64,000 bases of DNA from Octopus bimaculoides (lineage: Eukaryota). The notes below the pieces were generated by a model, which had not been told where the DNA came from, did no database searches, and worked only from the letters and a program-made list of their open reading frames with translations. Shown piece after piece: positions 1 to 63,479 of the stretch. The stretch lies in the NCBI RefSeq assembly GCF_001194135.2, contig NC_068985.1, forward strand, positions 21,204,266 to 21,268,265. Direction: 5' to 3'. The translations under genes and the position numbers were made by a program. Numbering within the stretch: the stretch's first letter is position 1; each line of letters starts with the position of its first letter.

Positions 1-183
1 ATATATATATATATACATATTACCTTTTTTCATTCTGGACTATTTATTCTGGACTTTTTTATTCTGAACTTTGCACTCTCCGGCTGCACCTCTCCTGCCT
101 ACGGATTACTCTGTACCTATCTACTGATAAGAAATCGCCACAATACACCACAACATCTGAAGCCTTTGAACTTTTTCACTTGT

Positions 184-192
184 GTAAAACCT

Positions 193-245
<53 letters not shown>

Positions 246-246
246 T
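184..246. repeat. (TTA)n microsatellite
   Basis: Run of tta units visible directly; explains the poly-Leu ORF at 166-558. Confidence 0.95.
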
Positions 247-615
247 TTATATTTTCTTTACTTTCCTTTACTTACTGTCTCTTCGTACTGTGAATGTCCT
301 TACTCTGTTTTCTCTAATCTGCACCTGTTACTTTGTCTCCCTCTCCCTCCATTTCTTTTCTCCTCTCGTCTTCTCCTCTCCCTTTCTCCCCATTTTCTCT
401 CTATTGTCCCATCTTCCTCTTTTCTTTCTGTTTTGGTTTTTTTTTTCTCCCACTTTGCATATATTTACTTCTCCTCACGCCTTATTCATTTTTTCTCTTC
501 ACGCCTTTTTCATTTTTTCTCTTCACGCCTTTATTATTTTTCCCCACACCTTTTGTAATTTTCCTTCCCATGTCTGATTTCCTCCTCTGGTTTTTTTTTT
601 TTCGCTCATACCATC

Positions 616-888
616 ATGCCAGACTACAAATCTTTCCAACTCACTCTCCACAACCGCCTAAAACTATACCTCTGCACACTTCCCTCTCAATACTTTCAAC
701 CTTCTATCAAACTCTCATTACTCATTTTCAAAAAACCTCATTTCTCTACTCACATTTCGTTTCTCAGTCGCTGCTTACATCACCACCTCATCCCTAAAGG
801 TTTCCGCCTCCATTTCCACCCCACTCTCCAACCACCATCCTACCCATACTCTGCACCACATCCTACCGCCTTATGGGGGCCAGCATTC
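616..888 (+). mobile_element. Penelope-like retroelement ORF N-terminus, truncated by assembly gap
   Basis: Translation contains HISFLSRCLHHHLIPKGFRLHF, matching from memory the HxxFLxxCxxxxLIPKG motif at the N-terminus of Penelope/GIY-YIG RT ORFs. Sequence runs into Ns at 889. Confidence 0.55.
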
Positions 889-1731
889 NNNNNNNNNNNN
901 NNNNNNNNNNNNNNNNNNNNNNNNNNNNNNNNNNNNNNNNNNNNNNNNNNNNNNNNNNNNNNNNNNNNNNNNNNNNNNNNNNNNNNNNNNNNNNNNNNNN
1001 NNNNNNNNNNNNNNNNNNNNNNNNNNNNNNNNNNNNNNNNNNNNNNNNNNNNNNNNNNNNNNNNNNNNNNNNNNNNNNNNNNNNNNNNNNNNNNNNNNNN
1101 NNNNNNNNNNNNNNNNNNNNNNNNNNNNNNNNNNNNNNNNNNNNNNNNNNNNNNNNNNNNNNNNNNNNNNNNNNNNNNNNNNNNNNNNNNNNNNNNNNNN
1201 NNNNNNNNNNNNNNNNNNNNNNNNNNNNNNNNNNNNNNNNNNNNNNNNNNNNNNNNNNNNNNNNNNNNNNNNNNNNNNNNNNNNNNNNNNNNNNNNNNNN
1301 NNNNNNNNNNNNNNNNNNNNNNNNNNNNNNNNNNNNNNNNNNNNNNNNNNNNNNNNNNNNNNNNNNNNNNNNNNNNNNNNNNNNNNNNNNNNNNNNNNNN
1401 NNNNNNNNNNNNNNNNNNNNNNNNNNNNNNNNNNNNNNNNNNNNNNNNNNNNNNNNNNNNNNNNNNNNNNNNNNNNNNNNNNNNNNNNNNNNNNNNNNNN
1501 NNNNNNNNNNNNNNNNNNNNNNNNNNNNNNNNNNNNNNNNNNNNNNNNNNNNNNNNNNNNNNNNNNNNNNNNNNNNNNNNNNNNNNNNNNNNNNNNNNNN
1601 NNNNNNNNNNNNNNNNNNNNNNNNNNNNNNNNNNNNNNNNNNNNNNNNNNNNNNNNNNNNNNNNNNNNNNNNNNNNNNNNNNNNNNNNNNNNNNNNNNNN
1701 NNNNNNNNNNNNNNNNNNNNNNNNNNNNNNN
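889..1731. other. Assembly gap
   Basis: N run. Confidence 1.
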
Positions 1732-2076
1732 ATATACATATATATCAGAAAATGCTTCCTGCAAATCATACTAGTCTAATGTATTTATATATATACATAT
1801 GGTGCATGTGGATAGAAAGGGTTAAATCTAAGGTGTGTTCTTGAGAAATGTATGTAGATGTTTTACTTTCTTTTATTTTAAATAAGAAATTCATATATAC
1901 TAGTTGAAAGTCCTGATGAATCCTATTTTAGTGTAAATATATATATTAAACAAAGACTGGAAAATTTGCTATATTTCTAAAAATATACCAGATTTTCTAG
2001 TCTTCATTTTAATATATACTTACTCTGCAAATTTTAAAAACATACCAAATTTTCCACTCTTTGCTTTTTGAGGTTG

Positions 2077-2109
<33 letters not shown>

Positions 2110-2123
2110 TTGTGTGTGAGCAC

Positions 2124-2154
<31 letters not shown>

Positions 2155-2289
2155 CCATGATCATACTAGTGAGGTTGTTCATTTCCAATCTTCTGTGAAA
2201 AACCTGTCTGACCATGAAGACATATTACCTTGCTTGGAAACAAGAGAGTAAGGCATCCAGAAGTGGAAAGTCTACATCAACAAATTCCC

Positions 2290-2610
2290 ATTTGAACCAT
2301 GCAAGCATGGAAAAGTGGACATTAACCCTTTTGTTACTGTATTTATTTCTGAACCCAGAACCATGTGGTTGGGAAGCAAGCTTCTTACGATACAACCACA
2401 TTTGAAACTTTAACAACAGTGTAAAATTTTCACCACTAAAGGACTGCCTGAAACAGTTCTAGCCAAGAATGGTACTTAAGTTATATCATCTAAATTCAAG
2501 AGGTTTTGCAAAATAAGTGGACATTAAACATTTGAAGTCACTTGTTTCCCATTGTGTTTTCAAATGGTGAAGCAGAGTGCATTGTTCAAACAAAAAATCC
2601 CAAACAGCAT
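2290..2610 (+). mobile_element. Degenerate Ty3/Gypsy integrase core fragment
   Basis: Manual translation from 2429: FTTKGLPETVLAKNGT*VISSKFKRFCKISG / IKHLKS / FSNGEAECIVQT, matching the integrase pattern GLPExIVSDNGxQFxSxEFxxFCxxxGIxH...SNGxAER, with a stop and frameshifts. Confidence 0.75.
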
Positions 2611-2759
2611 GCCATAAAATCCATTTGTTGGTTGGAGTACAATCAAAATATTTTGTTCTCATTGTCTGCAACAGATCAGCCATTAGATAGGAAAATCATC
2701 CATAGAAGTGCTATAAACTATTGTGTCATTATTGCTGTGAAGGTCAGGAGCTGTCAGAA

Positions 2760-2940
2760 TCATTAGCAACATTTCATTCATCTTTATGTTTTGAGTTCAA
2801 ATTCTGCCAAGTTCAGTTTTGCCTTTCATCCTTACAGGGTCAGTAAAATAAGTACCAGTTGTGCACTGGAGTCAATGGGATCAACTTACCCTCTCCCCAG
2901 AAATTTCTGATCTTGTTTCAAAACTTGAAATAATTATTAT
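2760..2940 (+). mobile_element. SINE family B copy (tRNA-like B-box, degraded)
   Basis: gagttcaaattctgccaagttcagttttgcctttcatcc...aagtaccag block is shared with copies at 7735-8180, 46110-46320 and 56975-57175. Confidence 0.7.
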
Positions 2941-3049
2941 TGTTGTAAAACCATGGTCAAATGGAAAACAAGTAAACAGTTCAAATAAATTATATGGTTA
3001 AATCAATAGAATAAAAAGTACAATGAACTTGCAATGAGGAGAGGAAAAT

Positions 3050-3270
3050 TCAACATTTCAGACAGTGTGTCTTCAAGGAAAAGTTGACAGGAGAGAATTT
3101 AATGAGATGCAGTAAAGTTTTATATTCTCTAAGTTAAAACAACTAGCCACAGGTTTTTGTTTTTTCTTTTAATTCAGAGGATGTAAAAATTTGCTGTCTT
3201 CAATAATTTCATTAATTTTTTTCCTGTCAACTTTTCTCTGAAGAAGGCCTCTGTCCAAAACACCGGCTTT
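3050..3270. repeat. Imperfect inverted repeat with degenerate hammerhead-like cores at the outer ends (Penelope-type terminal structure?)
   Basis: cttcaaggaaaagttgacaggagagaatttaatgaga (~3071) is the near reverse complement of tttcattaattttttcctgtcaacttttctctgaag (~3207-3243). Both ends carry (C/T)TGAAGA...(G/A)AAA(C/T). Confidence 0.5.
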
Positions 3271-3569
3271 TCCATTTTCCATGGCAAGTTCATTACATTT
3301 GTTTTATTGATTTTACTAAATAATACGTGTCTTTCCAATGCAGATGAACACCAACCTCTTTGGAGTCTGTTTGATCCAATAAATTATGCATTGGACAATT
3401 GGTGTTTATCAGGGATTATCAAAAGCAAAATAGATCTGTGGTGCAATTACAAAGAAACTCAGTTCAATAGTGTATTTGATTCAAACAGACAAGGATTAGA
3501 TCCAATTACAAGATTATCCAGTACAATTGCTGACCAGTCATACACACATTGAATATGTCTGATGACTTC

Positions 3570-4050
3570 ATCATCATCCTCATCATCATCATCGTTGTCA
3601 TCTTCATCATAGTCATCATTATCATTTAACATCTGTTTTCCATGCTGGTATGGGTTGGATGGTTTGACAGGAGCTGGCAAGGCCAGGAGCTACGCCAGAT
3701 TTGATTGTCTGTTTTGGCATGGTTTCTATAACTGGATACCTCTCCTAATGCCAAACACTTTATAGAGTGTACTGGGTGCTTTTTATGTATCACCAGCACC
3801 TGTGTTTTTCATGCAGAACCATCAACAATGCTTTTTATGTGGTACCATTACTAGTTCTTTTAATGTGGCACCAGCACCATCAGGGTCACCATGTACCTTG
3901 CAAGACAAAAACTCCTCAACTGGGAATGGAGGTCAGAGTAGTATTGAGGGTGTGTGACTTTGTGCCCGTTGAGAGATTTAAGGCATAGAAAGGACAGATA
4001 CAGGCATCTTGTTGTAGCATAGATGCATGGATACCCCAGTTAGCAAACAA
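3570..4050 (-). mobile_element. SINE family A copy ((GAT)n-tailed, RTE-type tail)
   Basis: (cat)n run followed by ttaacatctgttttccatgctggtatgggttggatgg...ggatacctctcctaatgccaaacac; same block occurs more than 12 times in the window. Confidence 0.75.
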
Positions 4051-4344
4051 AGAGTGGGTTAGAGAGTAAGATAAAGAGACAGATAGTGAGAGAGATGATG
4101 GCAAAGATGTGTTAGGACATGCCCTGGAAGGACATTGGGGGTGGTGAGAATAGATGTGGCTTGGGCTGTGTGAGTGGGCAGGATGAGGTAACTGTGGCAA
4201 ATGATGGAGGGAAATATAGGAGAGGCTCAGCGGCAGGGGTTGCAGTAGATATGTGAGGACATTGCAGGTGATAGCAGGAAGTGAGGTGTTGATGATGGGG
4301 AGCAGCACAGGGAGGAGAGGAAAGAGGCAGATTGGTGGAGAGAG

Positions 4345-4446
4345 NNNNNNNNNNNNNNNNNNNNNNNNNNNNNNNNNNNNNNNNNNNNNNNNNNNNNNNN
4401 NNNNNNNNNNNNNNNNNNNNNNNNNNNNNNNNNNNNNNNNNNNNNN
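4345..4446. other. Assembly gap
   Basis: N run. Confidence 1.
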
Positions 4447-5199
4447 GGGGAATAACTGGTGAGGGAGGTAACTGAGAAAGTCAGGGGATGTAGTATGTGC
4501 CTATACTGCTCTCAGATGATAGAGGAAGTGATGGGTGGTAGATCAAATATGGGGGGGAGGAAGAAGAGTGATGGGGTAAATAGGCTGGAGGTAAGCATTG
4601 CCACTGTCATCAGTTACTCTTTGCCAATCATGATCAAGTCATTGCTATAATCACACAGAGCCACCTGGTAGCAACAAATACTGGAATGATAACTCACTAT
4701 CATCAATGAAAAATTTACAGTTTATTGTTATTTCAGATTATGCTTTAAAATCTTGTGCTATTTACCAATTTAATACATATCTTGTTGTTGAAAAATATTT
4801 ACCATATAATATTATCTTTTCAATGCATGTCAATCGTTATAATTTATGATTTGATTAAATTTAGAAGCAACCATTAATGTATTTGAAATTCAATTATTAT
4901 GTCTTATCTTCGTTGTCATTAATTCAATATAATCTGTGCAAACTGTTCAAGTGAGTAGTTATATTTCTTATAATACATTGTATTTTGGTTACAGCTTTCT
5001 ATCTATCTATCCATCTATCTATCTATCAATCTATCTATCCATCTATCTATCTATCTCTCAATCTCTCTCTATATATATATCTGTGTGTGTGTGTGTGTGT
5101 GTGTGTCTGTGTGTGTGTGTATGTATACATATATGTTTGTTTTTGATTTTGTTGACTACACAGTATGGTAGGGTCAGTTCAGCACCATCTGTGAGAAAA

Positions 5200-5926
5200 A
5201 CAGCACCATGATGCAATTCACTCTGCCAGAAATTTGGAAATGACATGCTGTATTGCTTGGCATTCATGCCGGAAGCTCCAATATGAACATTTCAGAGTGT
5301 TTGAGTGTCAATCTGAGGAAAGTGCAATCTGAGTGACAAAAATCAAACATCCAGTCAACATCATGGTGTTTGAAGTGATCACTAATGATCTTCCCACATG
5401 GCCTCACACTTAACGCAGAGGCCTACGTCAAGTGCCTGGAGGAGGTAGTGCTGCCTTGGGTCAACAAGGTGGCTGCTGGAACACCCTATGTCTGGCAACA
5501 GGACTCTGCACCGTGCCACACAAGCAGGAGAACCCAGTCATGGCTGTCAGACAATTTCTGCAACCACATCACCTCTAAAATTTGGCCTTCTAACTCCCCA
5601 GACTGCAACCCTCTTGATTATGATATGTGAGGTGCAGTTGAGTGAGAGACCAACAAAACTCCTTGTAACACCAAAGATGAACTGAAGGCAAGGATTATAA
5701 CAGTATTCAACAACTTAAACAAGGAGACCATCGAGAAGATTTGCAGGAGATTCCACAGTCAGCTGGAGACTGTGGCTGAAGCCAATGGCGATTTTATTAA
5801 ATGAATTTACCCTTTAGTATTTCAAGATATTTTAATGTAATTTTGGTAAATATATGTTAAAATAAGATGTTAGTATTATTTTCATTTTTGTGTAATTTAG
5901 ACAACATTTTTTTCCACAGCACCCTG
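5200..5926 (+). mobile_element. Tc1/mariner DD37D (maT-type) transposon remnant, C-terminal half plus right TIR
   Basis: ORF 5385-5630 has WQQDSAPCH...WPSNSPDCNPLDY with 37 residues between the last two Asp. The frame continues past a stop (GAVERETNKTPCNTKDELKARI...). Ends ...cagcaccctg followed by TA at 5927. Confidence 0.85.
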
Positions 5927-5934
5927 TATATATA

Positions 5935-5980
<46 letters not shown>

Positions 5981-6088
5981 TCATTAGCCACCAATGGAGC
6001 CACAAATGCAAAATATAAGTTAGTCCTAGAGAGCACAATGTTCCTGAAGGTCAGCAATGGTCTTCCTCGGTCACGAGTGGATGGCCAT

Positions 6089-6130
<42 letters not shown>

Positions 6131-6616
6131 AACATACATTGACTCACTCATGCATGCACACACACACACATCTACATTGATTTGTCATATTTGATCTGCA
6201 CCTTTGGCATGCATGTGTCACATACATCTATGTATATATGAGCTGCTCCGATAGATAAACCCCACATTGGATAACATTGAAGAAAACCCTTGAATACGCA
6301 GCAGTACTGTTTTCTTTGCTGACTACAATATTCCAGGTGTGAATATTCACATCTGGTAGAATTGAGTTGATTCAAAACGTTAGTAGATTAGCTATGTCAT
6401 GAAAAAAAAAATGGAGATGTTACTGTCACAATTTTGTTATTTTATGTTGCTAAAACTATAAGCTGTGGAAGTTGCTTAATGAGTTGATACTTATAAATCT
6501 TTTTTTATGACAATAATCAGTTGATTACATTGTGTAAATAAAGTGTTTGGGACCCACTAATATTGATAGCAATAATTGGATGATAACATTATCTGTGATT
6601 ATAATAAATTTCATCT

Positions 6617-6990
6617 CATCGTTATTATTTAATGTCCGCTTTCCATGTTGATATGGGCAGGATGGTTTGACAATGAGCCGCCAGGCTGCATCAAGCTTCA
6701 ATGTCATATCTGGCATGGTTTCTACAGCTTTATGTCCTTCCAAATGCCAGCTGCTTTACAGAGTGTTTTTTTTTTTGTTTTTTTTTATTCACCACCACTA
6801 GTGAGGTTCTCGTGTAATTTGTAAGACAGAAAAGAACAGAGAAAGAGAAGAGAGAAAGGGAAGAAAAAGCTTCCACTACTAAGAAGTTTTGGAGAGCACA
6901 AGATGGAGGTGAATGGCTGTATACCAGGTGTTGAAAGACAAAAATACAATAGAGGATAGGCATCTTGCTAGACAGGAGATATATGGCTGA
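6617..6990 (-). mobile_element. SINE family A copy
   Basis: tttaatgtccgctttccatgttgatatgggcaggatggtttgac... block plus the internal segment shared with other copies. Confidence 0.7.
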
Positions 6991-7084
6991 AGGAGATAAG
7001 AGAAAAGTAGTGATGGGATACTAGAGCAAACTCTAGTGGCACAGGAACAAGAAGGTGAGCATCAGAGAGGACAAGGGTTGTGGA

Positions 7085-7390
7085 TAATACAGTTCTATAT
7101 TTAAGAGATGAGGAATTATGTACATTATTTACATTATTTACAATTGACAGATATTTGTCCTCATTTTGTTTGTTGTTAACACAACGTTTCGACTAATATA
7201 CCTTCCAGCCTTCATCAGGTGTCTTGGGGAAATTTGGAACCTGGGTTCTCATTCCTAAGGTATTTTTCGATGTTGTTGTTGTTATCATTATTATTATTAT
7301 TATTATTATTGTTATTATTCAGGTCACTGCCCAGGATCGAACTCGGAATCTTGGAGTTAGTAGCCCACACTCTTAACCACTATGCCATAG
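7085..7390 (-). mobile_element. tRNA-derived SINE with A/B boxes, (AAT/AAC)n linker and hammerhead-like 3' domain
   Basis: Minus strand reads tatggcatagtggttaagagtgtgggctactaactccaagattccgagttcgatcctgggc (A box TGGCATAGTGG, B box GAGTTCGATCC), then aat/aac repeats, then cCTGATGAaggctg-gaaggtatat-tagtcGAAACg. Confidence 0.7.
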
Positions 7391-7734
7391 GATTGTGGAT
7401 TATAGGAAGAGATGAGAGAGTGAATGTTTTTATAAGAGTGTGAGGAAGGAATAAACAAGTGTCTGGAGAGGTTAGTGTAGTAAACGATTAAAAAGGGTGG
7501 GGATGCAAATGGTGGGAAATGCCAAACTGCAGAAGGGTAAGGTAGGAGATACAGGAATAGCTCAGGAAGGAGGATAGAACAGATTGGGCTTTGTAGTGGG
7601 TTCCACACTCTATTTCAGTATCCAATATATACATAGTGAAACTGATAATCCTACAGACCATTGGCATAATCAAATAAAGACAAAAAAAAAATGGAAATGA
7701 ATCATATATCACTAACCTAATATTTTTTTCTACT

Positions 7735-8180
7735 CTAGGCACAAGGCCTGAAATTTTGGGGGAGGGGTCCAGCCAAACAACTGGTACTTAATTTATCGAC
7801 CCCGAAAGGATGAAAACCAAAGTCGACTTCAGCAGAATTTGAACTCAGAACATAAAGACAGACAAAATACCACTAAGCATTTCACTCGGCATGCTAATGT
7901 TTCTTATTTCTTTACTCCCCACAAGGGACTACACAAAGAGGTGACAAACAAGGACAAACGGATTAAGTCGATTATATCAACCCAAGTGCGTAACTGGTAC
8001 TTATTTAATCGACCCCCAAAAGGATGAAAGGCAAAGTCGACCTNNNNNNNNNNTCGACCCCCAAAAGGATGAAAGGCAAAGTCGACCTCGGCGGAATTTG
8101 AACTCAGAACATAAAGACAGACAAAATACTGCTAAGCATTTCATCTGGCATGCTAATGTTTCTGCCAGCTCACACCTTTC
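7735..8180 (-). mobile_element. Two adjacent SINE family B copies (second interrupted by a 10-N gap)
   Basis: atcgaccccgaaaggatgaaa...aagtcgac...gaatttgaactcagaac...ctaagcatttc occurs twice. Confidence 0.8.
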
Positions 8181-8439
8181 ACTAGCCTAATATTGTTACC
8201 TAGGTCTACAAGATATGGACGTGTTCTGGCATAGAAGTCATCTGCCTTCAATGTTGTTAGAAAATAGAAGAGGAAGAAAACATCTATGAGTCACTGATGA
8301 GTAGTTTGTTACTGCAGTACTCAAAGCACCAACATAATTTTATTTCGATTATTGGATCAAAAGTCTGCTATCTTTATTAAACATTCCAACATCTCTCAGT
8401 CTCTCTCAAAGGATATCAACTACGAGTGGAACCTTGTGA

Positions 8440-8520
8440 CAGTGTATGCTATCTTCAAAAAAAGCAACCACTCTGATCTTACCAACTACAAACACATCTG
8501 TCCTACTACTACCACTACTC
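8440..8520 (+). mobile_element. CR1/Jockey-type RT fragment
   Basis: IFKKSNHSDLTNYKHIC resembles the conserved PIxKKGDxSxxxNYRPISL motif; short and decayed. Confidence 0.4.
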
Positions 8521-8764
8521 CCAACATCTACAAGGGGATGTCACAAATAACCAATGTTCATTATTATTTTGAATCTCTTTTTCTCTTCAGTTACCACCAG
8601 TTGTTTCTTTACAGCCAGGGCAACCAGAGATTTGCTATTTCATGTCACACTAATTTTTTTCTTGCCTGGAGAATTTTTGTGAAAGCAACATTGTTGCTTT
8701 TGGTATTGACAAAGACTTTAACTATATATATATATATATATAATCATCATCATCATCATCATCG

Positions 8765-9225
8765 ATGACTGGCACCTGTGCTAGTGGAGCACTAACACCA
8801 CTGTCCGAGCGTGATCATTGCCAGAGCAGCTGTCTGGTTTCCGTGCTAGTGGCATGTAAATAACACCATTTGAGTGTGATCACCTTACTGGCACGTGAAA
8901 AAATATTTGAGCGAGGTCATTGCCAGTGCTGCTGGACTGGCTCCTGTGCGTGTGGCACATAAAAAACACCACTTTGAGCGTGGCCGTTGCCAGTACTGTC
9001 TGCCTGACCCTCGTGCCGGTGGCACATAAAAGCACCCACTACACTCTCGGAGTGGTTGGCGTTAGAAAGGGCATCCAGCTGTAGAAACTCTGCCAGATCA
9101 GATTGGAGCCTGGTGTAGCCATCTTGTTCACCAGTCCTCAGTCAAATCGTCCAACCCATGCTAGCATGGAAAGTGGACGTTAAAACGATGATAGTGATGA
9201 TGATGTATTTTATCACCTATTGAAG
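8765..9225 (+). mobile_element. SINE family A young copy with internal ~60-bp tandem units
   Basis: Four to five diverged units (gtgccggtggcacrtaaaaa-cacca-ttgagcgtggyc-ttgccagt) followed by the conserved 3' block ending ggacgttaaaacgatgat. Confidence 0.85.
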
Positions 9226-9814
9226 CAACACTGAGACATTTGTATGTTCCAGTGAAAAGTATATTAGTTTGTATATCTACAAGATATAACTGGTTTCAAT
9301 TACAAGGTTATATAAGTGCTAATACTTTCAATATCGTTTATTTAATTTCTTGTAGACTCTACCACCTGTTATATACAACGCCCAGAATATTTCAAAAACA
9401 TTTTGTCAGCTGACTTCACTAATCACATGATCTTTTGTTTATTGATCATCTCTCTAAACTCATGTGACTTGGTTAGACAAAAGCAATAAGTTCATGAATT
9501 CAACCCGGAAACCTTAACACTAGAAATAAATATGCATCTTTCTTTACCCCCGACATATAAACAAAGTTCTGAGTCATAAATTCCCTCTTCAGTCTTACAT
9601 ATTTCTGCCTTAATGGTCAATTTTATATTCTTGTTACAAATTAAGTTCTCATTTTTTTTTTATGTAATGGAAGGGAAATAGCAGAATCCATAGACTTTCT
9701 CATGCAGGGCCATCCTTAGGAGGTGCGGAGCCCAGTTGGGAACAATTTTGGAGGGCTCCAGGTACCCAGTCAACTTGCACCAAGGTCTATAGAATCATAA
9801 AAATACAAAAATCT

Positions 9815-10026
9815 AGCCGTTAAAACCATGCTCCCATGCGGTGCCACATAAAAACACTCAGTCCACACTGCAAAGTGGTGGCGCTAGGAAAGGCATCCAG
9901 CTACAAAAAACATGCCAAACCAGACGAATGCCAGACGTAACCCCTGGCTTGTTGGCCACTGTCAAAACGTCCAACCCATACCAGCATGGAAAATAGATGT
10001 TAAATGATGATGATGATGATGATGAT
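9815..10026 (+). mobile_element. SINE family A copy (older)
   Basis: aggaaaggcatccagctac...cgtccaacccataccagcatggaaaatagatgttaaat(gat)n. Confidence 0.75.
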
Positions 10027-10331
10027 ATGCATATATTATGTATATATTTATATGTGTGTGTGTATATATATATGTATATATGTGTGTGTGTATGTGCCTG
10101 TGGTAACTGTCCGAAACATGGATAATTTGTTAATAAAATTTTCTACATATATGTCTCAGATGGTGTAGATTATGATTATATCGGAATTTGTTGTGTAAAG
10201 CATTTTTCTCTCCCTTTTAAATAAACTCAAAGGTAGCCGGTCCTCAATGTGGTTGTTTAGTATGCTAGAAATAGCAGCTATTAGGCATAAAAAAACAGCC
10301 ACAGTTCTGATCTCCTAATATGTCACAAAGG

Positions 10332-10512
10332 GGAAAAAAGTTCTTTGCAGTATACTAGGAGCCAAGATTAATTGATAGCACACAAAAAAAAAAAAAACGA
10401 GGTAAAAGAAATAATTCCAAGGTGGAGGTCCAAGAGCCTCACTCCAATTTTGGTGGAAAAAAGTTATTTGCAGTATATTAGGAGATGAGATTAGTTGATA
10501 GCACAAGAAAAA
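10332..10512 (+). repeat. Local ~55-bp direct duplication
   Basis: ggaaaaaagttctttgcagtatactaggagccaagattaattgatagcac (~10332) versus ggaaaaaagttatttgcagtatattaggagatgagattagttgatagcac (~10454). Confidence 0.8.
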
Positions 10513-11959
10513 ACATTATTTCTCACCGAAATCGAGTTGGGTGTTATTAAACTATAAATTTGAACTACATCTAAACTACGCGTTTTAAAAATATTCCGGC
10601 AAAAATCAGAAAATAATTTAGCAAAATCCCAAAGAAACTTTTATCTCTTGCATGCTGTTATGCTAAAAGAGATATACATAAAATGCAAATAAATAATAAT
10701 TATTAATAAGAATTTTTCGGAAGCTGGTTATAAACTTACTGATTATTTTTTTTTTCTATAAGCTCTGTTGTAAGACAGTCCTGTCTGTGTGGCAAGAATT
10801 TTGTTTCTTAGCTATATGTTTCTGGATGTAGCACCATTGTATAACACCAAATGTCTCTCTCCTACCATTGCCTCATGTGTGTGTGTGGCTGTGTGTTTGT
10901 GCTTGTCCAAAACCTGAATGGGTGCTATGCAAAGAGATTTTCTTTTGAACAAGAGACAAGAAATTATATCTCACCTCCCCCATCTTTCTCTCTCCCACTA
11001 TACACACACACATACGCGCACATGCATGTGTGTATTTATACAATTCCCCACAAAATAAACATACATATACATTTTTTGATGCCCTTTTAAAGCCTGACCA
11101 GGCTCATGGGCCCAGTTTCCCAGTTTCTATGGCGTATGTGTGTGTCCCCCCCCCCCCAGCTGGACGGGATGCCAGTCCATCGCAGCGTTACTCAAGAAAC
11201 AGGAAGAAAGAGTGAGAGAAAGTTGGGGCGAAAGAGTACAACAGGGAATTGAAGCTGCGAGTCCGCTGCCCTAACCACTGGGCCATTGCGCCTCCACATA
11301 TGTAAGTGTACCCTTGCCATAACATCAGATGATGGTTGTAAACATCATCATCATACAAGTGATGCTAATTTCCAGTCTTCCATGAAAACATGCTTAGTCA
11401 TGGGGAAATATAACCTTGCTTACAAACAGGTGAGAGTTGCCAACAGGAAGGGCACCTGTCTCAACAAATTTCATCTGACCCATGCAACCATAGCAAAGTG
11501 CACATTAAATGATGATGCCTTTTTCAACAGTTGACCACTCTAACTCTTCTTTCTGCTAATACCACCACTCCAATTATTTGTGTATGCATGCATGTATGTC
11601 AATAGAGAATATATATATATATATATATATTCCCCTGTATACAAGCCCAGTTTTTCTCTCTTTTTTGTTTTCTTGAGTCATGAAAGATGATATGCAGTTG
11701 AAAGTAAATATGTGATAATGTAAACCAATACATGCAGACAGTTGCAAGAGTAGTTACAGCTCTGGTGTAAACTATAAGCAGCAGTAAAGTGATCAATTTC
11801 ATAGGCTACCATTCCTTCCTGATCAAGTCTGCTATACTTATGAAAGCAGGATGTCTTCAGATTTATCTTTTATGTTTTTCTTTAGATTATTCCAACTGTC
11901 ATTTCACAGCTATTGGAAGATTTTGGTTTAGTCTACACAAATAAAATGGTCAGACTATT

Positions 11960-12420
11960 GAAACTGTACTGGAACAATTTTCATTTTGATGCCAGTATAG
12001 CCAGTCCTAATCCAGCACATTTACATAATTGAATAAGTATTTAAATGCAGAGATGTTCGAACAGCTAGCTGAGCAAACAGTACATGAATAAAGCGACAAC
12101 TACAACACTGAATGCCTAGAATTTTATGGAAAGACAGCTCCCTCAAGGTTCATTTTCTAAGTACTTCTAATATTCTCATGGGTATGATGAATTTCCACAC
12201 ACAATCCAACTTACTAAGAATTTACAGTATGCTTCTATCGATGTCATATCCCTTCATCGGATAAATGAATACATATCCCACTGCAAAAATTATGTTTAAC
12301 AAAACATATTTTTCTAATCAATCTTTGGTTGGAAAAAGTTTGCAGCTTCTTATAAGAAAGCATTCATTCCATTATATATGATGAAGAATTACTAAGGGGA
12401 CAAAGTGGCTATTTTGTAAT
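11960..12420 (+). pseudogene. Highly decayed piggyBac-like transposase relic
   Basis: Scattered peptide pieces KYLNAEMFEQLAEQTV, ILMGMM and DEELLRGQSG occur in the order expected for LIxEQTNxY, ILMG and DExMxxFxGR. Many disruptions. Confidence 0.35.
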
Positions 12421-12554
12421 CACTGGAAATAATAAGTTTTGATGTAACATTTTTCTTTCTCTTTTACATCTTATATATATTTCAGCAAAGTTGACACCAA
12501 CTTCATACAAGCATGAAGGCACGCTGGCAAAATGCTGTTCTTCTAAATGAAAAC

Positions 12555-12735
12555 CTTACCTGTCGTCGTGGTTTTGTGGCATGAAGCAAAGCAGACCTTG
12601 TTGTCCACTCAAGAAAACACATAGTAAATGATCCACAAGCACTTGAGCAAACTGAGCCCTCAACTTGCTCCATTTACAAAAAGGTTAAACAAGACACAAG
12701 CAGGCCTCAAGAGGCACATGTGTGTTCATAGAACA
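12555..12735 (+). pseudogene. Two degenerate C2H2 zinc-finger relics (possibly LINE C-terminus)
   Basis: LTCRRGFVA*SKADLVVHSRKH and TCSIYKKV/KTQAGLKRHMCVH: finger-like spacing with a stop, a Cys loss and a frameshift. Confidence 0.4.
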
Positions 12736-12788
12736 TGATCACTGCTTTATTTTACTATTTATATTTGTTGTTCACAACAAGAGAAGCA

Positions 12789-12824
<36 letters not shown>

Positions 12825-12849
12825 TGCATACAGTTTGAGTTACAAATGA

Positions 12850-13667
12850 TGTGAAAAGCCCTGCCAAAATCATCTTATCTTTCCTCTTCCTCACAGCAGA
12901 GAAATATCTAAAAGGGCTATTCAGTAGACAAAATGGAAAATTTGTTGCCCTGGAGAACAGTGAGAGAGATGTGCTGGAACAGCTACTCCTGGGGTTCACA
13001 CTTAGAGATACCCTTCTCTACCCTGATAGTGGTATCTGAAATTGAAAGCGGCGACGAGGATGATTTTACACCAGAATGGAGAAAAGATTTTAAAAATATT
13101 TTTATTAACAATTTTTCTGAGGAGACAGAGTCTACCCATAGTCTTTCTCAGGAAGCAAAACCTTTAGACTTCTTTTTCATGCTTGTTTGAAATGATTACT
13201 GCGGAAACAAACCGTTACGCAGAACGTAAACAAGCTGGAAAAAAAGATAGCTTGTGGTTTCCTGCAACTGTAGATGAAATACGGGCATTTTTTGCCATAA
13301 ATATTATTATGGGTATTAGACAGTTACCCAGAATAACAAATTACTGGAGCAATCAGGAACCTTTTGGCGATGAATATGCTTCCAGTAATATGACTCGAGT
13401 ACGATTCATGAAGCTGAACCAATATTTACATGTGAGAGACTCTAGCAGTACCCCAGTACATGGAGAACTTTGAGACAAAAATTATGCAATAGAATTGATT
13501 AAGAACCCTTTCTTCAATTATGTTCCAAATATCACATTAATATGTTGATAAATAAAAAAAGCTACAGGTGTTTAATGAGACTAGTCTAAATTCATGATTA
13601 TTTTAGAATTTAATTGAAACTCATGAGGGGTGTATTTTGGTCAGAAATATAGTAACGAAAGGGTTAA
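12850..13667 (+). mobile_element. Internally deleted piggyBac (PGBD4-like) remnant with right terminus
   Basis: ORFs 12933-13190 and 13183-13473 give PLDFF / FEMITAETNRYA...TVDEIRAFFAINIIMGIRQLPRITNYWS...MTRVRFMKLNQYLHVRD (piggyBac N-terminal half). Ends agtaacgaaaGGG-TTAA (TTAA at 13664-13667). Confidence 0.85.
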
Positions 13668-13689
13668 TCAATTGCAGCACTCTGAATGA

Positions 13690-14280
13690 AGGAGTCCTCG
13701 AAATCACAACTGTTGGGTTTCACTACCAAAATGTGATCTCTCTTGGTAAAAGCACATCCTTAGCATGTCCATTGTTCTATGTTTGTGTGGGTTGATGACT
13801 ACAATTGAGGCATTTTTACATTCAATCATCTATTTATCAAGTAAGGGGTCTCTTATTTCACATAACAAGGATGTAAATCAAGCATCCCAATGATCAACCT
13901 TTCTCTTCGAAGCACTACTGATGCACACAGACATTCCAGCTTCTGGTTACCGGCACACTGTCTCCACTCTGTCTTTTCTATTGCAATTATAATGGCCTCT
14001 GTTCCTTAGAGATGGTTGAGCTCATGTTACCTGACTCAGACATTCCAGTCATACCTGTCTCTCCTATTTCCATCATCTTTGTTGTGTCCAACCATCCTGA
14101 CTCCATACTAACAACTATGCCCTGTCCTTCCTCTCCAGAAAGTTGACTCTCTTGAATTCTCTCTCCACTCATATTTCTCAAAGGTTCAAGGGAAGCATTA
14201 ATGGCATTGATCTCACTGGTCTAGGAAGTCTACAAATGCTATGAGCACTGACCCTACCTCCAGAACTAGCAAGTAAAAGC
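13690..14280 (-). mobile_element. Decayed non-LTR retrotransposon RT fragment (RTE/L2-like)
   Basis: Minus strand contains LIAFVDF followed by disrupted RT-like segments; multiple stops. Confidence 0.35.
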
Positions 14281-14397
14281 AAAAATTGCTTAACCCATTA
14301 ATGCATATAGTTTAGTTTACATTCTTTTTCAATAAAATTTTGTGTGCAGAATAGTTACCTTGCATTTAAATTTTCACTAATTATTAGTGAAAGAAGT

Positions 14398-14528
14398 AGT
14401 ATTAATACCAAAAGGCAATCTTTATATCCAACTTATTTTGTTAGGACACCAAATACTGTGGTATTTAGTGTTCTAACAATACATTCACATTTAGTTAGAT
14501 GAAAGAGTTGCCTTTTGGTATTAATACT
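14398..14528. repeat. 131-bp imperfect palindrome (hairpin/MITE-like)
   Basis: Outer arm agtattaataccaaaaggcaa pairs with ttgccttttggtattaatact; inner arm ttgttaggacaccaaatac pairs with gtatttagtgttctaacaa around a tgtg loop (14457-14460). Confidence 0.9.
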
Positions 14529-15008
14529 GCTTGTCATTAATTATTTTTTAACAAGCCTGCCAGCTACCTGCAACATCAGGTAAAGTCACTATAATTTGGT
14601 ATATCATTGGCAGTGAGACCTTCGCTGGTATGCATCAAGCGGACAGCTGTCAGTGAAGAGACACAGTACATTGAAATCACTTGATCTAGACAATTCCCAT
14701 CTGCCAACAATATACGTGTACCTTTATGTACCACACATTCATATAAGAGGACCTCTCAAGGTGAATCCTGCAGTATTCAGTCTCCTAACAAAACATCCAT
14801 CTATGTTCAACTGTATATAAAGACCACCTTTCAAATTTTCAATGTTTCAATACTGACAGAATTTTGGTTATAAAGTGTCTATTTAGGACACAATGCAGTC
14901 TGGATATAAAAAAAGACATTTCGAATAAAACAAATTTTATTTAAGACACATATTCAGTACAAAAAAAAAACATTTATTGATAAACATCTGTTTTAGTGCA
15001 TAACAAGT

Positions 15009-16912
15009 CTAGTATACTTTTTGACATTTGGGATGGAATCAACATCACACTTTGAAGGTGAAAATGTGGCTTTACAAGTGCAATACTACATCTTTGATTT
15101 CTGAGTGTAGCCTGTGAGTCAAGCCATCGTCATAAACTGAAAAGTTGTACTGCAGACTGAAATCTTCCTCCATAGGATGCAAAATCCGTATAGATCTTCA
15201 AAACTGCAACAGCTGAACACCATCAGAACTGGAAAAGAGGATTTGTATTGTTCTTTGATTTCTTTCAAAGTAACCAAGCAGTCATTACAATCACATCAAA
15301 AAAATAAATGAAGATTGGCTACCACCACCTTTTCCTCTCGTATGTCTTGCTATCCATTGAGCAAGTTGATCCACTTCCATCCCACGAAGGAGTTGTAATG
15401 GTTCATAGAAACTGGTTAAAGGAATTGTACACTAAGATTTTCCAGGGAAAATCGTTTTGTTCAGCCAATAATAGACAAATTACATTTTGTTGCTAAGGTG
15501 AGCACATTATTGCCATTATTTTATTGCAAATACAGTGGGTGTTGTAGAAATCTCAGTGCTTACTTTCATCTTCTTCAATGCTACCGTTTTTGGTAAAAGG
15601 GCAATTCCCAAATCTAATTTCTCATATATATAGTTCCTAATGCACAAATACCAATTTCCGATAAGTGGATGAAAAGATCATAGGATGTAAAATAATCATC
15701 AAAATATAGTTTATATCCAGATTTTTTGGCACATTTCCTTTATTGATCTAATTTACTAGTTTTTGATTTCAACACTTTTGTTGAACCCACTTGCTTTTCC
15801 TATATATATATATATATTCAATAACAGAACAGCCACTTTTCTAACCCAAATCTAATATGCTGCTTGGTAAAGTAACAAACAAAATTAGAAATCCTACATT
15901 CATTGAGAGAAATATGTTCATCCAAAGTCTTCAGCTCAAGAAACTTTTTCCTAAGTGATCTAAAATTGGTTATATACTGGATAAGCTGTTTGCATAATCC
16001 TTCAAATAAGTAAGATGCAGAATATCTTCAAAATGATTATATTGGATTACAATCCATCAACCTAAATGTCTTTCTCGGGTGACAAATAGATCCTTTTACT
16101 AGGACATTTAGAAAAAGTCCTCTAAACATCATCTATATTTTATTACCAGATGCATTCAAGGTGGTGTTTTTCTGATGAGCATAAAGGATAGTCTGATGAA
16201 GGATATTCTGGGAAAATGCTTTATCAAATATAAGTTTAAAAAACTTCCGCCTCTAATTCACTTAATATAATATGAAACATTCTGGCACTGGTTTCGAAAC
16301 AGTGTTATATACATTTATATCAAATACTGGTACAGTGTTTTTCTTCCATTTCAGGTTTTTATCTATTTTGTTGACTATTTGGGCGTACTTACAGTTTCTT
16401 CTTCATTCACATCGTTCGTTCCTTTTGGCACAAAATCACACTGAGTTTCTCGGCAGTTCACTTCTTCCTAAACAACTCACTGGATCAGCGGAATCATTAG
16501 AATCATCATCTGTTCGATTACCCTTTTCTACTTCGGGAATAAGGAGTGCAATGTCAAGTAGTGGAGTTTCTATCATCGCCTTCTTCTAGGATTTCCGAAA
16601 CCTGATGCATATTCAATCTGAAAAATAGAAAACAAAGTCATTCTGATCGTAATGTAAACATGTCTAAAGACCGGTTGTAGGGTCTGCAACTTATTACTCA
16701 ACCAACATAACTTCAGAGTCCTGATTCCAAGACATATAAATCATCATACCAAAAACCACCTATGGACTGAAAAACAAATATTTTTTTATGTTTGCGTATT
16801 TTTACACTTATTTGTAAACTCCCAAATGATTGTCAGTAAACAGTGAAGTTGAAAATTACTACAAAAACCCAGCTTACCTGTCTATGAAAACACTTGTTGA
16901 CTGTGACGCCAT
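15009..16912 (-). pseudogene. Decayed PGBD3-like piggyBac transposase with 5' coding mini-exon (16878-16912), 260-bp intron (16618-16877) and main exon (15009-16617)
   Basis: Minus-strand peptides: FFKLIFDKAFSQNILHQTILYAHQK; KKFLELKTLDEHISLNE; IRFGLEKW; GYKLYFDDYFTSYDLFIHLSEIGICALGTI; HYNSF..GVDQLAQW..RGKRWW*PIFI; KCDVD.HPKCQKVY*. Donor CAG/GTAAGC and acceptor tttgttttctatttttCAG join in frame to MASQSTSVFIDRLNMHQVSEILEEGDD. Many stops and frameshifts. Candidate far end TTAA-CCC at 14290-14296. Confidence 0.85.
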
Positions 16913-17049
16913 ATTGGAGGTAGCATGCAAAATAAAAGAGTTATTCATTAAATTCTATAGATAGAAAACAGTTTAAATGTTAACTGAAACAAAATATAGA
17001 TAATTACAACTTGTAATTATTTGGTACTTTATAATTTCGTGACGATCGT

Positions 17050-17248
17050 ATTTTCTAGTAAACAACGTATTTAATGAGCTAAGTTACTATTCCAAGAGAA
17101 ATCTCGCGTGGGTTTGCGAGAGAGAACGAGAGTGAGATCTTGTGATGGCTGTCGTTATTGATATAACGGCGGTAAGTTGAGCGAGTGTTGGGAGGGAAGG
17201 AAGCCACAATAAAGTGTGTGAGCGACTGAACCAATCCCTCGCACGCAA
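17050..17248 (+). promoter_or_regulatory. CpG-enriched promoter/5'UTR region
   Basis: Sharp local rise in CpG in an otherwise CpG-depleted window; TCTCGCG-like motif at ~17102, CCAAT at 17231; directly upstream of the only long clean ORF. Confidence 0.65.
17145..17171 (+). CDS. Candidate alternative short first coding exon (MAVVIDITA)
   Basis: gtgATGG start context, 9 codons, then a perfect donor GCG/GTAAGT at 17172 (phase 0). Confidence 0.4.
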
Positions 17249-18128
17249 ATGGACGATCAATTGAAACTGGTACACGGAGGCGTAGCCCAAACAAACACAA
17301 CAGACAGTCCCGGGGCTCCCACCACCAGTAGTCCCTTTCCGAAGGAGGATACCGATAGTACTACGAGCACCAGCAGTTGCGATTGTGGCAGTGGTGTTGT
17401 CACAAACGCAGCTGCAGTAGACACGGTACTGAGTGAAAATGGCAAAGATAGCGAGGCTAAAGTCTCGAGCTTTGATGTAACTAGCAACAACACGACATCG
17501 TGCATGTTAAGCAACACAGTCGCTAGTACATTGACAACAACAACAACAACAGGCTCACCATCAACATTCACTGCTTCAGATACAGCAGGGTCTGATTCCT
17601 CGTTAGACCACCGTCTATCCGAGTGTAACATAAATAAAAATGAAGATGGAAGTGACGACAATGTTCCCGATAAAAATCCCTTGTTGGAGGTAGGATTAAT
17701 GCAACCCATTATGGAATCTAATAAAGCTATAATGGAAAATACTACTTCAAATGAAATGGAAACGAGTAAGTCTGATAATGCAAATAATCATGTCAGTGTT
17801 AATCACCCTGGATCCCCCGATTCTGGTGATGTAGAACTAACTTCAGCTATGCAACAACAAGGAAAACATGAACATTCTAGAGAACAACAACCTGTCATTA
17901 AACCACTGTTGTCGTCAGATGGTCGTTCTACTTCACAGGTTGCCGAGCAGAACACCACTCAGAGTTGGAACAAAACATCTGAAGCAGGAATGGAGGAAAG
18001 CAACAATGTGGAGCGACAACTGTCGCGAACCACCTGTCCGCAGGCTGTACCTTTGGAGACGATACCTAAACCTGGTGATCACGAACAGTCAAGAATAACC
18101 CTCAACAAAAAACAAACAAACGTGCAAG
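17249..18128 (+). CDS. Probable first coding exon of an unidentified host gene; S/T/N/E-rich, likely disordered N-terminus (~293 aa)
   Basis: 888-nt stop-free ORF in very AT-rich DNA, CpG retained, not microsatellite- or TE-like. Donor CAAG/GTGGGT at 18129 (phase 1) just before the in-frame stop, followed by intron-like AT-rich DNA. No recognisable domain. Confidence 0.75.
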
Positions 18129-18270
18129 GTGGGTAGATTATAGCTGCATTACAATTTGTACTGTGAGATGTTTCAACCCTTATGTTTACGTCATCAACAT
18201 TATTCGTGCCTATTTTCCGTAGTTCAACCTAAGTTCTCCTTTCGTTACACCTTACATTATTATTCTCCTC

Positions 18271-18273
<3 letters not shown>

Positions 18274-18333
<60 letters not shown>
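18274..18333. repeat. (TA)n microsatellite
   Basis: Direct; other (TA)n runs at ~18996-19040, 22226-22306 and 49165-49290. Confidence 0.95.
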
Positions 18334-18334
<1 letters not shown>

Positions 18335-18993
18335 TTCAGTATATCTCCTTCGACACAGTTATTATTTGTCTATTCCTTTAACACATTTGATTTTCGAAAC
18401 TTGCCCTGATTAAAATTTTTTTTTTAAGTCATTAACATGTATTTATATTTTATTTCTTTGTTGCCTTCGTTTTACCTTTACTTTAATCGGCTTCATATTT
18501 CGATTTACTGTTCAAGTTGTTACTTAATGGACGACTTCTATCATATAATTAAACTTGATATATTCTAGGACCTCATCTTTGTTTATTCCATGCATAACTG
18601 TGCCCCCTTCCAACTCAATGCAACTATCTTGCTACGTACCTTTTACCACGTATGAATAAAAACAATAAAATACTTCTAGATGCAAAATTAAACCACGCTA
18701 GTTGCAAATTTTGCTGTAGGTTAAAGTTGTTTTTTTACCTAACAAAATAAGAATAAGAGATATCTCGATGTGTGAAGACGATAGTTTTTATTTGACACCA
18801 AATAAATGCTATCCATAGTTTTATTATTCTTTCTCATTAAACTTACATCGTGACTTAATACACTGTACTGTCATTATTTGGAGGCTTATGTTTAAAAAAA
18901 AAATACTATAGATGTGTAAATTATATACTTAAAGAGTTCTCTACTATAAAAGACTTTCTTTACAGTCTTCAATAACTGCGCAGGAAATCTTTC

Positions 18994-19043
<50 letters not shown>

Positions 19044-43342: not shown

Positions 43343-43394
<52 letters not shown>

Positions 43395-63366: not shown

Positions 63367-63479
63367 TCAAGATCAGGGCATTTCACCATATAGGCTACTG
63401 ATACTGTAGTAGACGACATACTAAAGTGGCATTGAAACTTCTTATGACTGCTGCAGTGCTAGGAAAATCATCAGAATTA

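What the first reader, a model, noticed from the sequence alone, without database searches (positions are those of the whole stretch)
15009..17248. Spliced piggyBac transposase gene lying head-to-head with the host gene, splice signals intact while the ORF is dead
Seen: minus-strand ATGGCG at 16912 (within a YY1-like aatATGGCG), a 35-nt coding mini-exon, a consensus donor CAG/GTAAGC, a 260-bp intron and a strong acceptor. The splice joins in frame (MASQSTSVFIDR-LNMHQVSEILEEGDD) into a PGBD3-like transposase that is otherwise full of stops and frameshifts, with the first catalytic Asp changed to Asn (ISLNE). Its ATG is only ~230-340 bp from the host ATGs on the other strand. Known: PGBD3 carries a splice acceptor and acts as an exon trap (CSB-PGBD3 in primates). 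Inference: the element may share, or have donated, a bidirectional promoter and now yield an upstream-antisense spliced transcript. Retention of both splice sites may reflect selection or chance.
Basis: partly seen in the sequence, partly recalled or inferred. Interest (0 to 1): 0.7.

Follow-up and report, generated by a model that had tools for sequence, protein, structure and literature searches.

The report
Dead piggyBac transposon beside a promoter
This is a long-dead copy of a piggyBac "cut-and-paste" transposon lying back-to-front just upstream of an octopus gene; it still carries the splice-acceptor and poly(A) signals typical of this transposon family, but nothing shows that the proposed upstream mini-exon is used, so it is an ordinary relic.

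Summary
The sequence features are all present as described: minus-strand ATG 16912, a 35-nt open stretch, CAG|GTAAGC donor, 260-nt gap, Y-rich acceptor ending at 16618, and an in-frame join. Downstream (16616 to 14996) is a full-length but dead piggyBac-superfamily transposase. It matches Pfam PF13843 over profile positions 4-349 of 349 (E 1.3e-11), with 20 stops and 12 frame switches.

The acceptor lies 7 nt before an ATG (16610, MHQVSEILEEGDD). AATAAA follows the stop by 15 nt. This is the published "exon-trap" layout of PGBD3 and moth piggyBac. So the acceptor is most likely a family feature, and ATG 16610 is the likely original start.

The mini-exon and donor are rarer than chance (about 1-4% locally). 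In the one available ortholog (another octopod, 2.4-kb contig) they are not significantly better conserved than neutral sequence (2 of 35 mismatches, P about 0.1). That contig stops about 14 nt short of the acceptor AG.

No TIR/TTAA ends, no family relatives and no transcript evidence could be obtained. A native intron, a shared promoter and an antisense transcript all remain untested.

Verdict: an ordinary transposon relic. Interest is low.

The parts
14996..16610 (-). Dead piggyBac-superfamily transposase reading frame. The likely original start is ATG 16610-16608 and the last codon ends at 14996. It contains 20 in-frame stops and 12 frame switches.
   Evidence: Pfam PF13843 DDE_Tnp_1_7 matches profile positions 4-349 of 349 at E 1.3e-11 on the stitched path, and E 2e-7 in a single frame. 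The path was mapped.
14993..14995 (-). TAA stop of the transposase frame (...KKYTRLVMH*).
14973..14978 (-). AATAAA poly(A) signal 15 nt after the stop. A second AATAAA lies at 14941-14936.
   Evidence: The chance of an AATAAA within 50 nt is about 0.074. A poly(A) signal right after the stop is described for PGBD3 and T. ni piggyBac in PMC2268245.
16618..16633 (-). 3' splice-acceptor-like site gttttctatttttcag|, ending 7 nt upstream of ATG 16610.
   Evidence: The spacing equals the 7 nt reported for PGBD3 (PMC2268245). Its chance of lying this close to the ATG is about 0.011.
16618..16877 (-). Proposed 260-nt intron. It evolves at the neutral rate between the two species.
   Evidence: Identity to L001 over 16660-16877 is 77%. 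L001 is collinear down to 16633.
16869..16880 (-). 5' splice-donor-like site CAG|GTAAGC. The other species has CAG|GTGAGC.
16878..16912 (-). Proposed 35-nt mini-exon, starting with ATG 16912 inside AATATGGCG (a YY1/Pho-type consensus).
   Evidence: It matches L001 at 33 of 35 positions, P = 0.105 against the neutral rate. AANATGGCG occurs twice in the window against 0.53 expected.
16913..17146 (.). Spacer between the two head-to-head starts, which includes the host's promoter-proximal region. CpG observed/expected peaks at 1.54 in 17000-17249.
17101..17248 (+). Nearly invariant host 5' region (146 of 148 positions identical). It includes ATG 17147 followed by 27 nt and GTAAGT.
   Evidence: P = 4e-8 against the neutral rate.
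17249..18126 (+). Host coding exon 1 (Ser/Thr-rich, no Pfam domain), ending at donor CAAG|GTGGGT.
   Evidence: The ORF is open in both species (295 and 301 aa, 84% amino-acid identity). dN/dS is 0.70. The donor was read.

Best explanation
An ancient piggyBac-superfamily DNA transposon inserted in antisense orientation a few hundred bases upstream of a host gene's promoter. At least its 5' flank dates from before the split of two octopod species. It has since decayed into a non-coding relic.

What survives is the superfamily's standard exon-trap cassette: a polypyrimidine/CAG acceptor 7 nt before the element's own start codon (ATG 16610), one long transposase exon, and AATAAA just after the stop.

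The transposase was most likely translated from ATG 16610. The upstream 35-nt mini-exon was therefore not part of the original coding sequence. Its ATG (within a YY1-type motif) and its donor lie at the outer edge of the host's promoter-proximal sequence, or possibly in the element's 5' end. If they are used at all, the result would be a short-ORF, effectively non-coding, spliced upstream-antisense RNA ended by the relic's poly(A) signal. That would be a by-product, not a gene.

Shown: the homology, the decay, the signal positions, and the presence of the flank in a second species. Inferred: the original start codon, that the acceptor is native to the family, and the lack of function.
For: - PF13843 is matched over the whole profile, with 20 stops and 12 frame switches.
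- The acceptor ends 7 nt before ATG 16610, and AATAAA lies 15 nt after the stop.
- This matches published descriptions. [quoted passage not shown] In PGBD1-3 the transposase is a single 3' terminal exon (PMC3902484). [quoted passage not shown]
- The chance of such an acceptor placement is about 0.011.
- The joined ORF stops after 32 codons.
- Mini-exon conservation is not significant (P = 0.105). The truly constrained block is 17101-17248 (P = 4e-8).
- CpG is depleted in the relic body (observed/expected 0-0.37) and peaks only at 17000-17249.
Against: - A perfect CAG|GTAAG donor is rare (3 in the window; about 0.01 for this 400-nt stretch). It is retained as CAG|GTGAGC in the other species, together with the ATG and the open frame.
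- Identity steps up from 70-77% to 88-94% right at the proposed exon-intron boundary.
- That ATG 16610 is the ancestral start is an inference from layout. The N-terminus has no alignable homology.
- The element's ends were not found, so the mini-exon could lie inside the element.
Confidence: 0.6

Rival explanations
1. The element's transposase gene natively had two exons: a 35-nt coding first exon, a 260-nt intron, then the main exon. The element shares, or donated, a bidirectional promoter with the host gene, so a spliced upstream-antisense transcript is still made.
For: - The donor and acceptor are both near consensus and locally rare.
- The join is in frame with ATG 16610's frame.
- The ATG, the open frame and the donor are retained in a second species.
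- A perfect AANATGGCG motif sits at the ATG.
- T. ni piggyBac uses an internal promoter (PMC3902484).
Against: - Described piggyBac elements encode the transposase in one uninterrupted exon with the Met just after the acceptor (PMC2268245, PMC3902484). Here too an ATG follows the acceptor by 7 nt.
- The frame match is a 1-in-3 event.
- Conservation is not above neutral (P = 0.105).
- No TIR or TTAA places the mini-exon inside the element.
- No relatives were recovered to test whether the intron is native.
Confidence: 0.18
2. A selected, spliced upstream-antisense long non-coding RNA. A donor in host promoter-flanking sequence is joined to the relic's acceptor and ended by the relic's poly(A) signal. 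The exon-trap cassette would thus turn promoter-upstream antisense transcription into a stable RNA, possibly affecting the host gene.
For: - The same signals as above, plus the identity step at the donor.
- The element's flank is present in two species.
- The cassette is known to capture upstream donors (PMC2268245; bioRxiv 10.1101/2020.05.07.082677).
Against: - There are no transcript data.
- Only one pairwise comparison is available, and it is not significant.
- The relic's terminal exon shows CpG decay like neutral DNA.
- Acceptor conservation is unknown.
Confidence: 0.12
3. The mini-exon is exon 1 of a genuine divergent protein-coding host gene. Its next exon would lie beyond the relic, with the relic sitting in intron 1 as a cryptic alternative terminal exon, as in CSB-PGBD3.
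For: - A head-to-head layout with an ATG in a YY1-type context and a consensus donor.
- One synonymous and one conservative change across the 35 nt.
Against: - Inspection of minus-strand stop-to-stop frames of 55 aa or more in 1-14990 showed nothing that looked like coding exons, only low-complexity or repeat-like sequence. This was by eye and has low power.
- The in-frame codons just upstream of the ATG carry 3 non-synonymous changes in 12 codons, and conservation is not significant.
Confidence: 0.05

Closest known systems
PGBD3 / MER85-type piggyBac element in intron 5 of human ERCC6 (CSB), the natural 'exon trap' (PMC2268245, PMC3902484)
   Same: - The transposase is encoded in one long exon.
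- A polypyrimidine acceptor lies 7 nt upstream of the first Met.
- A poly(A) signal follows shortly after the stop.
- The cassette is able to accept an upstream donor in frame.
   Different: - PGBD3 has an intact ORF under selection, sits inside a host intron in sense orientation, and has a proven fusion transcript and protein.
- Here the ORF is destroyed (20 stops, 12 frameshifts).
- The element lies outside the host gene and antisense to it.
- No transcript is known.
- No TIR or TTAA ends are recognisable.
Trichoplusia ni piggyBac (the founding active element)
   Same: - The same Pfam domain (PF13843).
- A potential 3' splice site immediately upstream of the ORF and AATAAA-type signals immediately downstream (PMC2268245).
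- The DDD motif contexts are recognisable by eye for the 2nd and 3rd Asp (FDDYFTS, EVDQL).
   Different: - It is very distant.
- The first Asp context reads ISLNE.
- No CCC...GGG TIRs or TTAA duplication were found.
Transposon-supplied splice acceptors in host-transposase fusion genes (Cosby et al., bioRxiv 10.1101/2020.05.07.082677)
   Same: [quoted passage not shown]
   Different: Those are live fusion genes inside host genes. Here there is no coding potential and no evidence of capture.
Bidirectional promoters and promoter-upstream antisense transcripts
   Same: The head-to-head layout, with the two ATGs 235-337 nt apart, and a CpG-rich conserved core between them.
   Different: No transcription start site data exist. 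The mini-exon lies in the CpG-poor part (observed/expected 0.37). Divergent transcription in cephalopods was not assessed here.

Membership tests
piggyBac superfamily transposase (Pfam PF13843, DDE_Tnp_1_7) | Significant match to the DDE_Tnp_1_7 profile across the domain | tested here: met
   44.9 bits against a curated cut-off of 22.4, E 1.3e-11, profile positions 4-349 of 349 on the stitched path. A single raw frame gives 31 bits.
piggyBac superfamily transposase (Pfam PF13843, DDE_Tnp_1_7) | Catalytic DDD triad | tested here: inconclusive
   By motif inspection the contexts read ISLNE (first Asp replaced by Asn), YFDDYFTS and EVDQLAQ. No residue-level alignment could be obtained.
piggyBac superfamily transposase (Pfam PF13843, DDE_Tnp_1_7) | Open reading frame (active or domesticated copy) | tested here: not met
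   20 in-frame stops and 12 frame switches between 16616 and 14996.
piggyBac transposable element | Terminal inverted repeats flanked by a TTAA target-site duplication | tested here: not met
   All pairs of TTAA sites on either side of the ORF give at most 8 of 16 complementary bases. No inverted-repeat pair brackets the ORF. This is expected for so decayed a copy, so the element's ends are unknown.
piggyBac exon-trap cassette (PGBD3 type) | 3' splice acceptor a few nt upstream of the first Met of the transposase | tested here: met
   The acceptor AG is at 16619-16618 and the ATG at 16610, 7 nt apart. PGBD3 has the same 7-nt spacing (PMC2268245).
piggyBac exon-trap cassette (PGBD3 type) | Poly(A) signal shortly downstream of the stop | tested here: met
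   AATAAA at 14978-14973, 15 nt after TAA 14995-14993.
piggyBac exon-trap cassette (PGBD3 type) | Demonstrated splicing of an upstream exon to the acceptor | not testable with these tools
   No expression data are available. A search with the junction peptide found nothing, which is uninformative.
piggyBac exon-trap cassette (PGBD3 type) | Acceptor conserved across species | not testable with these tools
   The only orthologous contigs (L001, L002) end at window position 16633, about 14 nt short of the acceptor AG.
Bidirectional promoter pair | Two divergent starts less than 1 kb apart | tested here: inconclusive
   The ATGs are 235 and 337 nt apart, but transcription start sites are unknown. 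CpG observed/expected is 1.54 at 17000-17249 and 0.37 at 16750-16999.
Domesticated PGBD-type gene | Intact transposase-derived ORF under purifying selection | tested here: not met
   The ORF is destroyed. No homologous proteins were recovered.

The most novel reading that the evidence does not exclude
The relic's exon-trap cassette (acceptor plus poly(A) signal) has been co-opted. It would capture a consensus donor beside the host promoter and so convert upstream-antisense transcription into a stable, spliced, polyadenylated non-coding RNA that is kept in octopods and modulates the neighbouring gene.
Probability: 0.12. Interest if true: 0.45.

Novelty: new member of a known kind. Interest (0 to 1): 0.15.

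Why it matters
As it stands, the finding matters little. Decayed DNA transposons near promoters are common, and the acceptor-ATG-ORF-poly(A) layout is already described for piggyBac.

It does add one data point: the exon-trap cassette appears to extend to a mollusc lineage of piggyBac and can outlast the ORF.

If transcript data showed a conserved spliced antisense RNA built from a host-side donor and the relic's acceptor and poly(A) signal, it would be a tidy example of a dead transposon shaping promoter-proximal transcription in cephalopods. That would be modestly interesting, not surprising.

Tried and rejected
- **Relatives of the transposase.** The word-indexed protein search with the stitched sequence found nothing at E <= 1e-5. 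With the longest stop-free 69-aa piece it gave only one spurious repetitive hit, P0002.
- **PDB sequence searches.** These found nothing even at E <= 10.
- **More orthologous contigs.** A concatenation of all ORFs of the relic region plus the junction peptide found nothing at E <= 0.1. An exact look-up of the window's host ORF found nothing on record.
- **Element ends.** The TTAA/TIR pairing scan and the general inverted-repeat search gave only chance-level matches. There is no second copy of this element in the window.
- **Species of the ortholog.** A literature search for the SRA run numbers was uninformative.
- **Rfam.** There are no RNA families anywhere in the window, so no known structured RNA family accounts for the conservation near the mini-exon.
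- **Bacterial promoter/terminator scan**. This is irrelevant to a eukaryotic locus and was disregarded.
- **Divergent host gene.** I considered and set aside a real divergent gene with later exons beyond the relic. Inspection of minus-strand frames showed nothing that looked coding, but this was a weak test.

Full report
**1. The observation**

- ATG 16912-16910 lies inside AATATGGCG.
- A 35-nt open stretch runs to 16878.
- The donor is CAG|GTAAGC. It is the only GTRAG on that strand between 17250 and 16500.
- A 260-nt gap follows.
- The acceptor is gttttctatttttcag|, ending at 16618.
- The join reads MASQSTSVFIDR-LNMHQVSEILEEGDD, but it runs into a stop 21 codons after the junction (32 codons in all).
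- The plus-strand ATGs at 17147 and 17249 are 235 and 337 nt from the minus-strand ATG.

**2. The transposase**

One raw frame matches Pfam PF13843 (DDE_Tnp_1_7, the piggyBac transposase domain) at E 2e-7. A path stitched across frames matches the whole profile, positions 4-349 of 349, at E 1.3e-11.

Mapped back to the DNA, the path runs from 16616 to 14996 in 13 segments, with 12 frame switches and 20 in-frame stops. It ends at TAA 14995-14993. So this is a full-length but thoroughly dead piggyBac-superfamily gene.

It is too decayed for single-sequence searches. Nothing was found in the 5.8-billion-protein index, in the exhaustive representative library (only a spurious hit), or in the PDB.

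- 'PGBD3-like' is shown only at superfamily level.
- The Asp-to-Asn change at the first catalytic position (ISLNE) is plausible by motif. Compare EHISLNE...FGLEKWLFCY with the known HLTIDE...YGIKILMMCD context of moth piggyBac, recalled from knowledge. No residue-level alignment confirms it.

**3. The key anatomical point**

The acceptor ends 7 nt before an ATG (16610) that opens the acidic N-terminus MHQVSEILEEGDD. An AATAAA lies 15 nt after the stop (14978-14973), with a second at 14941-14936.

This is the published piggyBac layout.
[quoted passage not shown] Moth piggyBac has potential sites in the same places. The authors call this a natural exon trap (PMC2268245).
- In PGBD1-3 the transposase is one uninterrupted 3' terminal exon (PMC3902484).

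From motif densities in this window, an acceptor-like site falling within 10 nt of a given ATG has a chance of about 0.011, and AATAAA within 50 nt about 0.074.

I therefore read the acceptor and the poly(A) signal as family features that outlasted the ORF, and ATG 16610 as the likely original start. That ATG 16610 was the start is an inference from layout, because the N-terminus is not alignable. On this reading the transposase never needed a coding mini-exon. The in-frame join is a 1-in-3 coincidence of little weight.

**4. The mini-exon and donor**

They are not trivially explained by chance.
- CAGGTAAG occurs 3 times in the window on both strands (1.7 expected from shuffles). That gives about 0.01 for a chosen 400-nt stretch.
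- The looser AGGTRAG gives about 0.045.
- AANATGGCG occurs twice against 0.53 expected.

These are post-hoc numbers for a feature picked by eye.

**5. Cross-species evidence**

The host's first coding ORF (17249-18136) found one relative, P0001, at 84% amino-acid identity. It is encoded on two assembled contigs from two sequencing runs of another octopod (L001 and L002, identical where they overlap). The species could not be identified.

L001 is collinear with window 16633-19020, so it is genomic DNA. It carries the proposed intron almost to its end, the mini-exon and the donor. In L001 the mini-exon reads ATGGCGTCACAGTCAACAAGTGTCTTCGTAGACAG|GTGAGC. The ATG, the open frame and a consensus donor are kept, with one synonymous change and one Ile-to-Val change.

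Identity by segment:

| Segment | Identity |
|---|---|
| Proposed intron 16660-16877 | 77% |
| Mini-exon 16878-16912 | 33 of 35 |
| 16913-17000 | 90% |
| 17001-17100 | 86% |
| 17101-17248 | 146 of 148 |
| Host ORF 17249-18136 | 91% |
| Host intron 18501-19020 | 80% |

Against the neutral mismatch rate of 14.3%, estimated from the two intronic stretches:
- 2 mismatches in 35 gives P = 0.105.
- The mini-exon plus donor gives P = 0.108.
- 17101-17248 gives P = 4e-8.

So identity does step up at the proposed exon-intron boundary. But the mini-exon is not significantly more conserved than neutral DNA, nor more than the neighbouring promoter-flank sequence. The in-frame codons just upstream of the ATG carry three non-synonymous changes in twelve.

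The contigs stop about 14 nt short of the acceptor AG, so acceptor conservation cannot be judged. Both contigs begin at the same base, which suggests an assembly-graph branch there. I could not follow this up.

**6. Element ends**

No TTAA site pair with complementary inner sequence (best 8 of 16) and no inverted repeat brackets the ORF. There is no second copy in the window. Whether the mini-exon lies inside the element or in host sequence is therefore open.

The proposed intron is present in both species. So at least the element's 5' flank predates their split, assuming the proposed intron belongs to the element.

**7. The host side**

The 295-codon ORF is open in both species, and its length differences are in whole codons. 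It is Ser/Thr-rich with no Pfam domain. It evolves with dN/dS 0.70 and dS 0.083 and ends at a donor CAAG|GTGGGT at 18126.

CpG observed/expected peaks at 1.54 in 17000-17249. It is 0.37 in 16750-16999, where the mini-exon lies, and 0-0.37 in the relic body. The host's core promoter or 5' UTR is thus most likely 17000-17250. The mini-exon lies at its outer, CpG-poor edge.

**8. Conclusion**

- **Best reading (about 0.6).** A neutral, dead piggyBac relic that keeps the family's exon-trap cassette. The mini-exon was not part of the original gene. If the donor is used, the product is a by-product non-coding antisense RNA.
- **Rival: a selected spliced upstream-antisense RNA** using a host donor and the relic's acceptor and poly(A) signal (about 0.12).
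- **Rival: exon 1 of a real divergent host gene** with the relic in intron 1 (about 0.05; only a weak eye inspection of downstream frames argues against it).

None of these can be separated further without transcript data, more octopod loci or a family consensus.

The finding is a new member of a known kind and of low interest.

Noticed in passing
window 12934-13667 (+): A second, unrelated and better-preserved piggyBac relic lies on the plus strand. It has an ORF from ATG 12934, including an intact 96-aa stretch (13183-13473). It matches PF13843 positions 14-99 of 349 at E 2e-18. Homology then stops, and the sequence ends in AAAGGG|TTAA at 13658-13667, a canonical piggyBac terminus. This suggests an internally deleted copy, convergent with the relic under study.
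   Followed up: partly
window 14394-14532, 14812-14831 and 14901-14929: A 47-nt inverted repeat (79% complementary, 45-nt spacer) carries TTAATACCAAAAGGCAA on both arms. Related copies of the motif AAAGG..TCTTTATATCCA occur twice more, just beyond the relic's poly(A) signals. This may be a small MITE-like repeat cluster marking the relic's 3' boundary.
   Followed up: no
window 17101-17248 (+): The host 5' region is almost invariant between species (146 of 148, more conserved than the coding exon). It contains ATGGCTGTCGTTATTGATATAACGGCG|GTAAGT, which could be a short upstream ORF or an alternative first coding exon. It also contains an interrupted palindrome TCTCGCGTGGGTTTGCGAGA at 17102-17121.
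   Followed up: partly
window 17249-18126 (+) versus L001 616-1518: Synonymous divergence of the host exon (dS 0.083) is well below the mismatch rate of the neighbouring introns (0.143), while dN/dS is high (0.70). The exon seems constrained at the nucleotide level as much as at the protein level, or it lies in a low-mutation zone such as a hypomethylated promoter region.
   Followed up: no
L001 and L002, position 1 (about window 16631): Contigs from two independent sequencing runs of the other species start at exactly the same base, just before the proposed acceptor. This suggests an assembly-graph branch (a repeat or polymorphism) at that point in that species.
   Followed up: no
window 12555-12740: A C2H2 zinc-finger-like peptide fragment (...LKRHMCVH...) reads on the plus strand. 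One of the window's three CAGGTAAG sites lies on the minus strand at 12555-12562.
   Followed up: no
window about 900-1750, 4400-4500, 8070-8080, 43390-43660 and 63400-63900: Runs of N (1573 in total) and many (TA)n, (CA)n and (TC)n microsatellites. The window comes from a gapped draft assembly.
   Followed up: no
window 17027-17033 (-), equivalent to TTTATAAT on the plus strand: A TATAAAG / TTTATAAT element sits in a stretch that is fully conserved between the species (GGTACTTTATAATTTCGTGACGATCG), between the two head-to-head starts. It could serve either strand. Its spacing to the TCAGTT initiator-like motif at 16987-16982 (48 nt) is not canonical.
   Followed up: no
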